IMG/VR virus record: IMGVR_UViG_3300033997_000478
Coordinates: 124,001-188,000 of that record
Length of the DNA: 64,000 nucleotides
Reading direction: 5' to 3' (one strand)
A model generated the notes under the pieces. That model had not been told where the DNA came from, did not search any database, and worked only from the letters and a program-made list of their open reading frames with translations. The position numbers and the translations under genes were made by a program. This document shows positions 6,027 through 61,668 of the stretch, in pieces. The stretch's first letter is position 1, and every line of letters begins with the position of its first letter.

Positions 6027-6857
6027 ATGTCCAGTGAAAAGAATCCGGTCGATCTGATCAACGACCTCGCCGACGCAACCGGCGGCAGCGTTACCGAAGT
6101 CCAGCAGTTGTCGGACGGGAGCGGTTTTGCCATGCTGTCCATGCCGCTGCGCGAAGACCATTGGATTTACGAGACCGATTCGGCAGCGCCGGGTTACTCG
6201 GGCCCGTCCCCCATGCCCATGGCCGGCAACTGCCATGACCCCCTGCGGTTGATCTTGCAGGATCACCTGCAGACCGCATCCCGCTACGGTATCCGCTCGT
6301 CAACGTCCTGTGGTCGTGAGGATGACTTCGATCCGGATGCGATGGTCCGCAACATCGAGATCGGCCTGTTTGGCTATTACGGCAAGAACAGCCCCTACTC
6401 CCACGACCTGCAGTTCGAACCGGCTCGCGGCGGTAAGTTGCTGAACGTGGTGGAAGATGCGCTGGATGAACGTGGTCGTACGTTGTTTGAAATCCGCGAT
6501 CGCGTAAACCGTCGTCTGGCTGCGGACCCGGAACAGACCAACAACCTCAACCCGGCCCACCTGATCCATCCGGCCTTCCACGTCGAACTGCTGACGCTGG
6601 GCGCCCTGCTGCTGCGTCACAACAAGTCGCACAAGGCCCTGTTGGATGCGATGTCACGGGCAGCGGTTGAGGAGTGGGGCGTGGATCCGGAAACGGCCTC
6701 GCGTGTCATCTTCTCCGGTCTGAGCCTGCTGGTCAACTTCGACAAGAACACGTTGAAGGACTGGAGCGCTTTCGAAGAAGAGCGTCGGCGCAAGTGGCGT
6801 GAAGCCAACCCTCAGACGGTGGACGAAACCATTGCCGGCTGCGACGCTGCCGAGTGA
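6027..6857 (+). CDS. Phage hypothetical protein
   Basis: 276 aa ORF with AAGGA SD. Confidence 0.75.
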   Translation: MSSEKNPVDLINDLADATGGSVTEVQQLSDGSGFAMLSMPLREDHWIYETDSAAPGYSGPSPMPMAGNCHDPLRLILQDHLQTASRYGIRSSTSCGREDDFDPDAMVRNIEIGLFGYYGKNSPYSHDLQFEPARGGKLLNVVEDALDERGRTLFEIRDRVNRRLAADPEQTNNLNPAHLIHPAFHVELLTLGALLLRHNKSHKALLDAMSRAAVEEWGVDPETASRVIFSGLSLLVNFDKNTLKDWSAFEEERRRKWREANPQTVDETIAGCDAAE

Positions 6858-39038: not shown

Positions 39039-39110
39039 GCCCCCATGATGTACTGGAGCATTCCCGTCTCTAAAAGGACGGGTCGTGAGGTTCGAATCCT
39101 CAAAGGGGCA
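39039..39110 (+). tRNA. Atypical tRNA-like gene with CTA (amber) triplet in an enlarged anticodon loop
   Basis: CCCGT-CTCTAAAAGG-ACGGG; T arm TGAGG-TTCGAAT-CCTCA; 5-bp acceptor with two mismatches; no encoded CCA. Confidence 0.6.
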
Positions 39111-39123
39111 CTCACCTTTCAAT

Positions 39124-59424: not shown

Positions 59425-59471
59425 ACCGGCGCCCCTTCGGGGGCGCTTTTATTCCGTCAAGAGGGATTGCA

Positions 59472-59843
59472 ATGGAAGAGAAGTACGAGCACGCAGGGCG
59501 CGATCCGCGTCCGTTGGTCCCGCCGGGTCGTCACGTCGGTATGGCTGGTTGCCACTGGGTGGCCCATGTCGATTACGACGGTCGGTCACTGGGTTCGCCG
59601 GAAGTCTACCAGTGGCAGCCGTTTGCCAAGAAGTGGTGTCGTCCCAACGAACACGCCTCTGATCGCAACCTGGATCTGGTCAACTACCGCTGGGTGGCAC
59701 CGTGCCCGCTGCCGGTGACTGCGCCGGAGTACAACGAGGTCAAGGCTACGTTGACCAAGATCAAGAACGGGGAGAAGGTCTCGCCCGAGCAGATGGAACA
59801 GCTCATGCTGATCTTCCATGAGCAGGTCTTCCCCTACGCGTAA
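59472..59843 (+). CDS. Hypothetical protein
   Basis: GAGG SD. Confidence 0.68.
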   Translation: MEEKYEHAGRDPRPLVPPGRHVGMAGCHWVAHVDYDGRSLGSPEVYQWQPFAKKWCRPNEHASDRNLDLVNYRWVAPCPLPVTAPEYNEVKATLTKIKNGEKVSPEQMEQLMLIFHEQVFPYA

Positions 59844-59851
59844 GTCTTCAC

Positions 59852-60054
59852 GTAGGGGTTTGATGATTTGAACAAGTGCGATCCGAATGACGATGGCAAG
59901 TGAGTCGTTGGTAGATGCGCATGACCTGGGTAAGCTGTAGGTGGATAACCAGGACCAGGCGACCTTTGTTAGCTTCTGAGCGCAGAGGTTACGGACTAGC
60001 CGAGCACGTATGTGATGTTGGGGAGAGAGGGAACGCCGTATAGCCACCCCCTAC
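59852..60054 (+). ncRNA. Candidate structured ncRNA C (about 200 nt)
   Basis: Intergenic; several helices and a possible loop-loop pairing AAGCTG/TAGCTT. Confidence 0.45.
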
Positions 60055-60089
60055 ACATGTGCGATAACCTTCGTAGTTTTGGAGTGTTG

Positions 60090-60359
60090 ATGAAGATCAA
60101 GCAGTTTATCAAGGACGTGCGTGCGTTCAGTCAACAGCTGCGCTACTTGTTCGTAGCCATCTGGAACGGCGAGATCGTCTTCCGTGAAGATGGTCAGATT
60201 GGTTGTCGGAACATCGCCATCGGAATCAAATCCGAGCAAACCTTCGACGACTCGGTGATCGACGCTGAGATTGTGAGGACTGATGAGCAACAACCGCTTG
60301 CGCTCTCTGAGCGAAGAACAATTGCAGGACCTGATCCATCGAGCGGACAAGACGCTTGA
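60090..60359 (+). CDS. Hypothetical protein
   Basis: GGAG SD; overlaps the next ORF by 77 nt. Confidence 0.5.
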   Translation: MKIKQFIKDVRAFSQQLRYLFVAIWNGEIVFREDGQIGCRNIAIGIKSEQTFDDSVIDAEIVRTDEQQPLALSERRTIAGPDPSSGQDA

Positions 60360-60507
60360 TGAACTGGAAGGACTGATCGCTGAGGAGCAAAAGCTCACTC
60401 ACGAAAAGAACCAACATGTTTTCCTCTGTGAGGCACGGCAGTGTTTGACAGGCTTTCGTCTGAGTGCAACAAACGTGCATGCACGCAAGCGTATCCTCGG
60501 ACGATAA
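60283..60507 (+). CDS. Small coiled-coil hypothetical protein
   Basis: GAGG SD. Confidence 0.55.
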   Translation: MSNNRLRSLSEEQLQDLIHRADKTLDELEGLIAEEQKLTHEKNQHVFLCEARQCLTGFRLSATNVHARKRILGR

Positions 60508-60509
60508 CG

Positions 60510-61098
60510 AACCCAAGGCAAGGACTGGTAAGAACAAGCATCTCAGAAAGCAGTCGGAAACTACAACTGGTATTCAGTCGTCCCTGTCGATACGTACCCT
60601 CGCTGAAACCTGCAAAGGTGGAGAGGGATTCCTGCGTGTTGGCACATAAGGGGAGAGAAGCCCAGGTCGCGGTGAGGAAGAAACGCGATGAGTAAAGACG
60701 CGGTATCGTGCCGTCCCCGTACTGAGGGAGGGCATTAAGCGATACGTGGTGCAATCCCACACTTTCTGAGGTGCTCTTGAATCACGTCGTCCTGGACCGT
60801 TGGGAAAACCAAGTACCGAGAAGTGCAAGCGTTGCTCCGGCGATGCAAGCATGAAGTGTCCTGTGCCCGACGTGGGCGAAATCAGCCAGCTTGGGGTGCA
60901 AGGCTGATGGGTCCTGACTTAAAGCAATGCGTGTCGCCAGTCAGCGACATATCTAACCCTGCTACGTTACAGCTACCGGGAGACGCCACTCGGGAGGCTG
61001 CTCGACAACGCCTGTTTGAGTTAGAGGTGCGGGCTAGAACTGGCGTGGCTGCCAGAGATCCCCAAACTTGGCTTGACAGGCTGGACCTAATCTAGCTT
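60510..61098 (+). ncRNA. Candidate large structured ncRNA D (about 590 nt)
   Basis: 14-bp long-range helix 60537-60550/60762-60775, many hairpins, no credible ORF, ends at a strong terminator. Confidence 0.6.
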
Positions 61099-61099
61099 T

Positions 61100-61130
61100 A
61101 GACCCCCCTCCTTCGGGAGGGGGTCTTTTA
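61100..61130 (+). terminator. Intrinsic terminator
   Basis: ccccctcc-TTCG-ggaggggg followed by tctttt. Confidence 0.8.
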
Positions 61131-61170
61131 TACCGGGTGCAACATAGACCCTTCAAGAAGTGAGAAGAAC

Positions 61171-61617
61171 ATGACTTTGAGAAGCCTGAGTGAATTGGAA
61201 GTGTTGCCGTGCCAGTTGTACGTGCAACCCAAAGGCGAACGCAAGTATCGAGTGGTGGACATCGTAAGTCCGGTACCGGTACCGGATGGAATTGGGCCGT
61301 TCACGGCCACCTTCCACATCGCCTCTGGTTGTCCTGAGCCCGCCTTGACGTTGCGGTGGCCGGTGCCTGACAACCATCGCATGAAGAAAGAAACATTCCT
61401 GAACCTGTGTTACTCCCAGGCGGAGTATTTCAACGCCCAGCTGTTGAAGCTCGGCGGTCAATACCGTGTCACAGCGTTCGACCAAACTTACCAGGTCGCT
61501 GAAGATCGCTTCGATACGCATCGCTACACGATTCCTTTCAGTCCGTTCGAACTGGTGGCCGTGGAAGGTAATCCCTGCATCAGTCCGTACAACGCTGCCG
61601 TCGAGCCAAGTGAATAA
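61171..61617 (+). CDS. Hypothetical protein
   Basis: ORF track; terminator at 61624-61648. Confidence 0.68.
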   Translation: MTLRSLSELEVLPCQLYVQPKGERKYRVVDIVSPVPVPDGIGPFTATFHIASGCPEPALTLRWPVPDNHRMKKETFLNLCYSQAEYFNAQLLKLGGQYRVTAFDQTYQVAEDRFDTHRYTIPFSPFELVAVEGNPCISPYNAAVEPSE

Positions 61618-61668
61618 CCAGATCCCCGCCTTCGGGCGGGGCCTTTATATCTCCAACAAGGAAATGCA

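What the first reader, a model, noticed from the sequence alone, without database searches (positions are those of the whole stretch)
60510..61098. About 590-nt ornate non-coding RNA candidate with a tRNA-like subdomain
Seen: an unusually long stretch without a credible gene, ending at a strong terminator. A 14-bp helix (AGCATCTCAGAAAG 60537-50 / CTTTCTGAGGTGCT 60762-75) closes a multibranch domain. That domain starts with a D-arm-like hairpin (CAGT-cggaaactaca-ACTG) and ends with a T-arm-like hairpin (GTGG-TGCAATC-CCAC, 60746-60). Further helices: CACGTCG/CGACGTG (60783/60868), ATCAGCC/GGCTGAT (60881/60902), GTGTCGC/GCGACAT, whose loop AGTCA can pair with TGACT (60915), plus GCAA/GAAA-capped hairpins. 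G-U pairs favour the + strand. I see no tmRNA, RNase P or group I/II core motifs. Inference: a large phage ncRNA comparable in scale to GOLLD/ROOL, possibly a new class.
Basis: partly seen in the sequence, partly recalled or inferred. Interest (0 to 1): 0.72.

Follow-up and report, generated by a model that had tools for sequence, protein, structure and literature searches.

The report
Three structured RNA modules in a jumbo phage
The gene-free 590 bases of this jumbo phage are real non-coding RNA, but they form three separable folded modules rather than one giant RNA. The middle module belongs to a previously undescribed RNA family that is also present in cultured Xanthomonas phages, so it can be tested in the laboratory.

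Summary
No reading frame is conserved, and Rfam 15 has no match.

Related phage contigs show three modules on the + strand that occur separately elsewhere:
- **D1 (60537-60775):** a multibranch domain closed by the 14-bp helix.
- **D2 (60783-60959):** a pseudoknotted domain.
- **D3 (60960-61103):** an insertion placed before the terminator at 61104-61131.

In relatives, D1 and D2 are about 98-99% identical while the flanking genes are 5-16% diverged. A 125-aa gene can sit exactly between D1 and D2, and D3 can be absent.

D2 has strong covariation: 24 of 49 pairs change on both sides, a level no shuffle reached. A covariance model finds D2 in two other lineages and in the cultured Xanthomonas phages LucasX and RTH11. 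In those two phages its variable P4 arm carries a tRNA-Leu-like module.

D1 has moderate covariation and was found only in close relatives. Its tRNA-like hairpins never vary, so they cannot be tested.

The setting is a tRNA, RNA-ligase, RtcB and NAD-salvage island.

Best reading: stable phage ncRNAs that serve tRNA or RNA-repair biology. The mechanism is inferred, not shown. These are new families of a known general kind.

The parts
60519..60531 (+). Remnant of the 3' end of a CYTH-domain gene (C AAG GAC TGG TAA = K-D-W-stop). It marks a gene replacement upstream of D1 and is not part of the RNA fold.
   Evidence: Relatives L007-L010 carry a 175-176-aa CYTH gene that ends ...FKDWT* at this spot. 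Similarity to those relatives resumes at 60519, and about 777 nt there replace window 60291-60519.
60537..60775 (+). Module D1: a multibranch RNA domain. Closing helix 60537-60550 / 60762-60775. Arm A 60578-60656 (four stacked helices). Arm B hairpin 60666-60689. Arm C 60703-60745. Optional D-like hairpin 60551-60569 and T-like hairpin 60746-60760.
   Evidence: Folds with z = -4.7. On 5 sequences 97.9% of cells are paired, and 7 pairs change on both sides; 2 of 500 shuffles reach that, and slid controls give 0-2. Homologues at 81-98% identity lie in L007-L010, L016 and L020. Five or six frameshifting indels and no codon periodicity. The closing helix and the D/T-like hairpins never vary.
60783..60959 (+). 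Module D2: a pseudoknotted RNA domain, founding member of a new family. P1 60783-89 / 60868-74. P2 60792-97 / 60858-63. P3 60800-03 / 60809-12. P4 (variable arm) 60824-60851. P5 60881-87 / 60902-08 with the conserved loop AGCUNNGGGUGCA. P6 60909-12 / 60956-59. P7 60931-37 / 60944-50. Pseudoknot 60915-19 with 60939-43.
   Evidence: Covariance model R1 finds it in L004, L005 and L012 (92-94 bits), in LucasX (33 bits, E about 1e-8) and in RTH11 (26 bits, E about 2e-6). Of 49 pairs, 24 change on both sides; 0 of 500 shuffles reach this and slid controls give 0-6. A manual tally over 10 sequences shows all 7 P5 pairs covary. The pseudoknot changes from UGACU/AGUCA to AGACU/AGUCU in LucasX and reads GUGACUA/UAGUCAC in RTH11.
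60960..61103 (+). Module D3: a 144-nt insertion between D2 and the terminator. Predicted hairpin 60976-80 / 60989-93 and long-range helix 61010-16 / 61075-81.
   Evidence: Present only in the window and in L016/L020 (92% identical). It is absent from L007-L011, where about 10 nt replace it. Alone it folds no better than shuffles (z = 0.09). Against L016, 8 of 11 substitutions fall in predicted pairs and keep them, two pairs by double change. This is weak evidence from a single comparison.
61104..61131 (+). Intrinsic terminator: an 8-bp G+C stem with a UUCG loop and a U-run. It ends the transcription unit that holds D1-D3.
   Evidence: Terminator scan. The same type of terminator follows D2 directly in L004-L012 and RTH11.
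60093..60507 (+). Two small upstream ORFs (63 aa at 60093-60281 and 74 aa at 60283-60507), probably co-transcribed with D1-D3. The previous terminator is at 59428-59447.
   Evidence: ORF list and terminator scan. Neither ORF has a significant Pfam hit. Co-transcription is inferred, not shown.

Best explanation
The stretch is a string of three separable structured RNA modules on the + strand (D1, D2, D3). They lie at the 3' end of a transcription unit inside the phage's tRNA, RNA-repair and NAD-salvage island.

Shown:
- The stretch is non-coding.
- D2 firmly, and D1 moderately, are kept by selection on base pairing.
- The modules occur independently in relatives.
- D2 defines an RNA family shared with the cultured Xanthomonas jumbo phages LucasX and RTH11.
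- D2's P4 arm is a variable platform that carries a tRNA-Leu-like module in those two phages.

Inferred (roughly 30-35% for this particular mechanism):
- The modules are cut out of the polycistronic transcript. The long closing helices would serve as processing stems, and the tRNA-like parts as RNase P-type substrates.
- They then persist as stable ncRNAs that act in trans as tRNA mimics or scaffolds.
- In that role they would decoy host tRNA-targeting nucleases, or present or organise substrates for the neighbouring RNA ligases (Rnl-type, RLIG1-type, RtcB).
For: Non-coding: no conserved ORF, frameshifting indels, no periodicity.

RNA-level selection:
- D2 has 96.4% of cells paired and 24 of 49 pairs with double changes, reached by 0 of 500 shuffles.
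- D1 has 7 double changes, reached by 2 of 500 shuffles.
- G-U alternations appear only on the + strand reading.

Conservation above the flanks: D1 and D2 differ by 1-3 bases in relatives whose flanking genes differ by 5-16%.

Modularity:
- A 125-aa ORF lies between D1 and D2.
- D3 can be absent.
- D2 follows unrelated ORFs of 98 and 125 aa, which share no similarity.

Family reach: model R1 hits LucasX and RTH11.

tRNA link:
- D1 sits where tRNA-Ser sits in L004 and L005.
- The P4 insert of LucasX and RTH11 has a class-II D-arm and a perfect T-arm.
- The same module stands next to an RLIG1-type ligase in the Ralstonia phages RP12 and FLC1-1B.
- Its model cross-hits tRNA-Leu genes.

Context genes: RNA ligase, CYTH, RLIG1, RtcB, NadM and NAMPT.
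Against: - No expression, processing or end-mapping data. The one read-laying run showed only contigs, and the runs labelled RNA cannot be told apart from DNA carry-over or from mere sequence conservation.
- The window's own D2 has only a plain hairpin at P4. The window's genome has no copy of the tRNA-like module.
- D1's tRNA-like hairpins are untested, and energy folding disfavours them.
- D2 always lies just after an upstream element and before a terminator. That also fits a 3'-UTR or cis role.
- No protein partner is known, and there is no Ro60/TROVE gene.
- D1's alignment has only 5 closely related sequences.
- D2's pair counts come from an alignment fitted to the model.
Confidence: 0.55

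Rival explanations
1. Cis-acting element. D2, with or without D3, would be a riboswitch-like or protein-binding attenuator coupled to the terminator. It would control the downstream genes (the 148-aa gene, the RLIG1 ligase, the RtcB/NAD-salvage block). Alternatively it would be a 3'-UTR structure that stabilises or processes the upstream mRNA.
For: - D2 starts within 1-8 nt of whatever lies upstream, and P1 begins right after the stop codon of ORF98 or ORF125.
- In 8 of 10 homologues a terminator follows within about 5-25 nt.
- Its 3' half, made of loops plus the pseudoknot, is nearly invariant, as in a ligand- or protein-binding core.
- The gene order downstream is conserved.
Against: - In the window and in L016/L020, 144 nt (D3) separate D2 from the terminator. 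That is hard to reconcile with an aptamer-terminator switch.
- The terminators are the same strong, perfect UUCG-capped type found after ordinary genes. I saw no convincing alternative anti-terminator pairing, though this was by inspection only.
- The immediately downstream gene differs between lineages.
- A tRNA-like module grafted on P4 is not expected of an aptamer.
Confidence: 0.22
2. One reading: one large, roughly 590-nt ornate RNA of the GOLLD/ROOL type whose domains work only together.
For: - In the window and in L016/L020 the three modules are contiguous, with no terminator or ORF between them, so they are probably made as one transcript.
- The setting near tRNAs resembles that reported for GOLLD. 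This comparison rests on my own knowledge.
Against: - The modules occur separately in natural relatives.
- A protein gene sits between D1 and D2 in L007-L011.
- No inter-module helix is needed in any consensus fold.
- No Rfam match to GOLLD, ROOL or any other large RNA.
Confidence: 0.1
3. Relics of mobile or decayed elements: fragments of a self-splicing intron, a homing-endonuclease cassette or decayed tRNA genes. Their near-identity between phages would reflect recent lateral transfer, not function.
For: - The region is highly mosaic. HNH endonuclease genes appear at variable places (L004, L009, LucasX).
- The upstream gene has been swapped, leaving a CYTH remnant.
- D1 sits where a tRNA sits in other lineages.
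Against: - Compensatory changes across lineages that differ at about 30% of D2 positions show long-term selection on pairing.
- No group I or group II intron hit even at E <= 10.
- The flanks are not two halves of one gene.
- There is a single copy per genome and no target-site duplication.
Confidence: 0.06

Closest known systems
Bacterial and phage Y RNAs of the YrlA type (Chen et al. 2014, PMC4201824)
   Same: [quoted passage not shown]
- Encoded beside RNA-repair genes (RtcB).
- Reported in phages.
- Can be an RNase P substrate.
   Different: - YrlA RNAs are 80-130 nt long.
- They carry a Ro60-binding stem with the GNCGAAN0-1G motif.
- Their order is T arm, acceptor-like stem-loop, D arm.
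- They lie next to rsr (Ro60/TROVE).
- Here there is no TROVE gene in four genomes and no Rfam hit. The order is D...T, and the sizes are 180-330 nt. The window's own D1 and D2 lack a canonical tRNA-like domain.
GOLLD and ROOL large phage-associated ncRNAs (Rfam families; comparison partly from my own knowledge)
   Same: - Large, ornate, multi-helix non-coding RNAs.
- Found in phage or prophage DNA, often near tRNA genes.
- Function unknown.
   Different: - No sequence or structure match.
- The present elements are smaller independent modules of about 240, 180 and 145 nt.
- They are restricted, as far as searched, to one clade of jumbo phages.
tmRNA
   Same: A tRNA-like part combined with pseudoknots in one RNA. 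This applies to the LucasX and RTH11 form of D2.
   Different: - No alanine-type acceptor stem or CCA end.
- No tag reading frame.
- ARAGORN and Rfam do not call it at normal thresholds.
Stable small RNAs encoded in the phage T4 tRNA gene cluster (species 1 and 2 RNAs; recalled from memory, not checked here)
   Same: Phage-encoded stable RNAs of unknown function, co-transcribed with or located among tRNA genes, and with partly tRNA-like ends.
   Different: No sequence relationship was tested. They are much shorter, and no pseudoknotted core like D2 is known for them.

Membership tests
Any Rfam 15 family (including GOLLD, ROOL, RNase P, tmRNA, 6S, group I/II introns, riboswitches, self-cleaving ribozymes, Y RNAs) | Covariance-model score at or above the family's gathering threshold | tested here: not met
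   The whole window at gathering thresholds gave only 4 tRNAs, at 38.8-39.5 kb. The stretch 59700-61300 at E <= 10 gave only weak terminator-driven or chance hits of 13-19 bits, against thresholds of 37-80 bits. The same holds for the LucasX, RTH11, RP12 and FLC1-1B loci.
tRNA | Cloverleaf with a 7-bp acceptor stem, D arm, anticodon arm with a 7-nt loop, and T arm with a UUCRANY loop | tested here: not met
   - ARAGORN and the Rfam tRNA model find nothing in 60400-61200 at normal settings.
- D1's T-like loop is UGCAAUC, its 'acceptor' is 14 bp, and about 175 nt replace the anticodon arm.
- The LucasX insert is called only with the intron option, and the RTH11 insert only with the score threshold lowered as well. 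The LucasX call has a weak acceptor stem and no usable anticodon loop.
tmRNA | tRNA-Ala-like acceptor/T domain with a CCA end, plus a tag-peptide reading frame and pseudoknots | tested here: not met
   ARAGORN finds no tmRNA in the window, and Rfam finds none. Only low-threshold spurious calls appear in relatives.
YrlA-type Y RNA | Encoded next to a Ro60 (TROVE) gene | tested here: not met
   Pfam TROVE (PF05731) was searched in six frames in the window's genome, the L012 genome, LucasX and RTH11. There were 0 matches, while the control genomes were positive.
YrlA-type Y RNA | [quoted passage not shown] | tested here: not met
   Features taken from PMC4201824. D1 is 239 nt and D2 is 177 nt (about 330 nt in LucasX). 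The order is D-like...T-like, closed by the long helix. No Rfam hit.
Group I intron | Conserved P3-P9 core, and insertion within a single host gene whose exons flank it | tested here: not met
   - No Rfam intron hit at E <= 10.
- The upstream neighbour varies: a 74-aa ORF, CYTH, tRNA-Ser, ORF98 or ORF125.
- The downstream neighbour varies: the 148-aa gene, RLIG1 or HNH.
- Splicing itself was not testable.
Transcription-terminating riboswitch | Aptamer directly coupled to a conditional terminator through mutually exclusive pairing, upstream of the regulated gene | tested here: inconclusive
   A terminator follows D2 closely in most homologues. It is 144 nt away in the window and in L016/L020. 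I saw no clear anti-terminator by inspection, and no ligand test is possible with these tools.
D2 family (defined here) | P1 enclosing P2, P3 and a variable P4; P5 with the loop AGCUNNGGGUGCA; the junction UGAAGUGU; P6 enclosing hairpin P7, whose loop pairs with the upstream (U/A)GACU | tested here: met
   All elements are present in the window at 60783-60959. They covary or are conserved in 10 sequences from 4 lineages.

The most novel reading that the evidence does not exclude
D2 would be a new class of pseudoknotted structured RNA of jumbo phages that serves as a chassis for a tRNA mimic. The mimic would be grafted on its P4 arm in LucasX and RTH11, with a possibly analogous module, D1, placed beside it in the window. 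The RNA would work with the phage's RNA ligases (Rnl-type, RLIG1-type, RtcB) to counter host tRNA-cleaving defences, as a decoy, a sensor or a repair scaffold. That would be a Ro60-independent analogue of Y RNAs. D1 would be a second, unrelated new RNA class.
Probability: 0.25. Interest if true: 0.85.

Novelty: new variant of a known kind. Interest (0 to 1): 0.62.

Why it matters
Jumbo phages carry large tRNA and RNA-repair islands. Their roles in the contest with host anticodon nucleases are under active study, but the non-coding content of these islands is almost unexplored.

This work gives:
- At least one well-supported new structured RNA family (D2), a second candidate family (D1), and a conserved tRNA-Leu-like module in relatives.
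- All of them are unannotated in GenBank records and absent from Rfam.

D2 and the tRNA-like module occur in cultured phages with laboratory hosts: LucasX and RTH11 on Xanthomonas, and RP12 and FLC1-1B on Ralstonia. Expression, processing, partners and knockout phenotypes can therefore be tested directly.

The result also cautions that long 'ornate RNA' candidates read from a single sequence may be concatenated independent modules.

Tried and rejected
**Searches that found no relatives or only chance hits**
- blastn of the region against phage and plasmid collections: no hit.
- The search for related loci with the 148-aa and 309-aa neighbours in IMG/VR: nothing.
- Exact-pattern scans. The D1 20-mer gave no hit in IMG/VR. 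The D2 19-mer and a gapped motif found only L012.
- Metagenome 18-mer scan: L016 and L020 are true hits. L013-L015 and L017-L019 are chance matches inside unrelated sequence.
- Gapped motif in 185,579 bacterial genomes: 7 hits, about the number expected by chance, and none confirmed by model R1.
- Model R1 on Burkholderia phage FLC9 and Ralstonia phages RP12 and FLC1-1B: no D2.
- Model R2 (D1) on LucasX, RTH11 and the L012 genome: no D1.
- Model R3 (the tRNA-like module) on the window's genome: none, so D1 is not detectably related to that module.

**Ideas rejected**
- Protein-coding reading (the 90-aa ORF at 60823-61095, the 84-aa ORF, and the 121-aa ORF on the minus strand): rejected because of indels, absence in relatives and lack of periodicity.
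- MITE-like DNA element with 14-bp inverted ends: rejected because there is a single copy per genome, no target duplication, and G-U pairs valid only in RNA.
- Ro60/Y-RNA system: no TROVE gene.

**Checks that told nothing**
- Pfam on ORF98, ORF125 and the 148-aa, 144-aa, 74-aa and 63-aa proteins: nothing informative.
- ESM Atlas look-ups of ORF98 and the 148-aa protein: uninformative.
- The 250-nt gap at 59844-60092 folds no better than shuffles.
- Single-sequence folding of D2 (z = -0.84) and D3 (z = 0.09) is not significant. Support for them comes from comparison only.
- Literature: the LucasX paper and the jumbo-phage overview do not describe these RNAs.

Full report
**Source.** The window is bases 124001-188000 of a complete 324,428-bp jumbo phage genome with direct terminal repeats, from IMG/VR. 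Its only relatives among deposited phages are the Xanthomonas jumbo phages LucasX and RTH11, and these are distant. All genes around the finding are on the + strand.

**Check of the observation.** A strong intrinsic terminator lies at 61104-61123 and the previous one at 59428-59447. Only chance-type ORFs overlap 60510-61100. Rfam 15 gives nothing here, either at gathering thresholds on the whole window or at E <= 10 on 59700-61300. The weak hits are driven by the terminator hairpin. ARAGORN finds no tRNA or tmRNA in the stretch. Folding the whole stretch does not tell the strands apart (z = -2.6 on +, -3.2 on -). D1 alone is clearly more stable than shuffles (z = -4.7). D2 and D3 alone are not (z = -0.84 and 0.09).

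**Related sequences.** Public runs from many environments hold near-identical pieces of the stretch. Laying contigs of four runs gave three results:
- 60519-60776 and 60779-60959 differ by only 1-3 bases from the window, while the flanking genes differ by 5-16%.
- Two relatives carry about 402 extra bases exactly between 60776 and 60779, and they lack 60960-61103.
- About 777 bases replace 60291-60519.

Actual contigs were recovered through the 148-aa downstream protein and a 125-aa protein, and through exact-motif scans. They define four arrangements:
1. D1-D2-D3-terminator: the window, L016 and L020.
2. CYTH gene, D1, 125-aa ORF, D2, terminator: L007-L011.
3. tRNA-Ser, 98-aa ORF, D2, terminator, RLIG1-type RNA ligase: L004, L005, L012.
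4. In RTH11: CYTH gene, a 180-nt helix-closed element, 98-aa ORF homologue, D2 with a large P4 insert, terminator. LucasX also has the 98-aa ORF homologue followed by D2 with the P4 insert, in a 635-nt unannotated gap.

The 98-aa and 125-aa ORFs are unrelated. The window keeps the last codons of the lost CYTH gene (K-D-W-stop, 60520-60531), which dates a gene replacement just upstream of D1.

**D2 (60783-60959).**
- Architecture: P1 closes a junction that holds P2, a GNRA-type hairpin P3 and a variable arm P4. Next comes P5, with a conserved 14-16-nt loop (AGCUNNGGGUGCA). Then P6 encloses hairpin P7, whose loop pairs with an upstream pentamer to form a pseudoknot.
- Reach: a covariance model built from five close sequences (R1) recovers the L004, L005 and L012 forms at 92-94 bits. 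It also finds single sites in LucasX (33 bits) and RTH11 (26 bits).
- Model-guided alignment of nine sequences: 96.4% of cells pair, against 81.7% in shuffles. Of 49 pairs, 24 change on both sides. None of 500 shuffles reaches this, and slid controls give 0-6. That alignment is fitted to the model.
- Independent manual tally over ten sequences: all seven P5 pairs covary, as do two P1 pairs and five P7 pairs.
- The pseudoknot reads UGACU/AGUCA in the window and AGACU/AGUCU in LucasX. In RTH11 it reads GUGACUA/UAGUCAC.
- Reading the LucasX and RTH11 sequences showed that the model had mis-assigned their 5' halves. The true P1, P2 and P3 lie right after the stop codon of the 98-aa ORF homologue. 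P4 is replaced by an insert of about 170 nt closed by a 12-13-bp helix.

**The tRNA-like module in relatives.**
- The P4 insert has a class-II-type D arm (GGUGGAAUUGGUAUAC...), a variable-arm-like hairpin and a perfect T arm (GCGGG-UUCGAGU-CCCGC).
- ARAGORN calls the LucasX copy only as an 'intron-containing' tRNA with a weak acceptor stem. Rfam does not call it.
- The same module, without the D2 core, lies between a roughly 100-aa ORF and an RLIG1-type ligase gene in the Ralstonia jumbo phages RP12 and FLC1-1B.
- In the four-sequence alignment, the T stem and the variable-arm hairpin covary.
- A model of the module cross-hits genuine tRNA-Leu genes weakly. It finds no copy in the window's genome and does not hit D1.

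**D1 (60537-60775).**
- Homologues at 81-84% identity (L007, L008, L016, L020) and 98% identity (L009, L010) allow a test.
- The consensus fold has the 14-bp closing helix and three arms. Of its cells, 97.9% pair, and seven pairs change on both sides. Two of 500 shuffles reach that, and slid controls give 0-2.
- Many C-G to U-G and A-U to G-U changes fit only the + strand.
- The closing helix and the D-like and T-like hairpins never vary, so nothing can be said for or against them. Energy folding prefers a competing extension of the closing helix. The outer pairs of that competing model break in two sequences, which leaves the T-like hairpin open.
- Model R2 finds D1 only in close relatives.
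- D1 sits where tRNA-Ser sits in L004 and L005.

**D3 (60960-61103).** This is an insertion found only in arrangement 1. Its only support is that 8 of 11 differences from L016 keep predicted pairs, two of those pairs by double change.

**Coding potential.** Homologues differ from the window by 5-6 (D1) and 3-4 (D2) indel runs that are not multiples of three. Substitutions are spread evenly over the three codon positions. The 90-aa ORF at 60823-61095 spans D2 and D3, so it cannot exist where D3 is absent.

**Context and interpretation.**
- The neighbourhood in all lineages holds tRNA genes, an Rnl-type RNA ligase, CYTH, an RLIG1-type ligase, RtcB, NadM and NAMPT, and scattered HNH endonucleases.
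- The jumbo-phage overview describes such RNA-repair sets, and TROVE proteins with tRNA-like partners, in some jumbo phages (PMC7824862).
- There is no TROVE gene in the four genomes searched here. The defining features of YrlA Y RNAs (PMC4201824) are not met.
- The best-supported statement is that these are independent RNA modules maintained by selection.
- The most likely role is as stable, processed ncRNAs connected with tRNA and RNA-repair biology. I hold this at roughly one in three.
- A cis-regulatory or 3'-UTR role for D2 is the main rival.
- A single giant RNA, mobile-element relics and coding are unlikely.

**Limits.**
- The D1 alignment is shallow.
- The phage collections could be searched with models only genome by genome.

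Noticed in passing
window 39039-39111 (+): ARAGORN calls a tRNA-like gene with a four-base anticodon (taaa) between tRNA-Arg and tRNA-Glu. The Rfam tRNA model did not report it at the gathering threshold. It could be a frameshift-suppressor-like or defective tRNA.
   Followed up: no
L035:3044-3224 (LucasX MW825358 about 136543-136723); L036:2802-2987 (RTH11); L046:1181-1396 (RP12); L047:1117-1332 (FLC1-1B): A conserved tRNA-Leu-like RNA module, unannotated in the GenBank records. It has a class-II D arm, a covarying variable-arm hairpin and T arm, and a conserved CUCAGARAGCA tail, and it is closed by a 6-13-bp helix. In the two Ralstonia jumbo phages it lies between a roughly 100-aa ORF and an RLIG1-type RNA ligase gene. 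In the two Xanthomonas phages it is nested in D2.
   Followed up: partly
L036:2281-2455 (RTH11 OQ790161 about 68028-68202): A roughly 175-nt intergenic element between the CYTH gene and the 98-aa ORF. It is closed by a 14-bp helix and folds with z = -5.2. A much shorter hairpin with similar closing strands lies at the same place in L012 (about 6441-6500). It occupies the position that D1 or tRNA-Ser occupies in other lineages.
   Followed up: partly
window 60542-60552: The 11-mer CUCAGAAAGCA in the 5' strand of D1's closing helix is identical to the conserved tail that follows the T arm of the tRNA-like module in RTH11 and RP12. This may be coincidence or a recombination scar.
   Followed up: no
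window 60519-60531: Remnant of the CYTH gene's last codons (K-D-W-stop). The window's phage lost CYTH, and two small ORFs (63 and 74 aa) lie upstream instead.
   Followed up: yes
window 61124-61140 and 61642-61655; L004, L005, L009: The strong UUCG-capped terminators are each followed by a similar (U)CUUUAUAUC/CUUUUAUACC tail. This is a recurring terminator cassette, possibly with a promoter, at gene boundaries of this phage group.
   Followed up: no
runs X5-X37: Near-identical pieces of D1-D2 occur in runs from very different sources: subsurface, soil, estuary, fermentation, mouse gut, air, wastewater, and a dozen runs labelled with single organisms. Several are labelled RNA. Whether this reflects wide spread of the phage group, abundant stable RNA or contamination could not be settled.
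   Followed up: partly
L021:2648-3000; L031:1-495: More distant homologues of the 125-aa ORF (55-59% identity) are preceded by other long non-coding stretches. In L031 these contain tRNA-like T arms. In L021 an RLIG1-type ligase gene lies upstream. Neither D1 nor D2 is detected there.
   Followed up: partly
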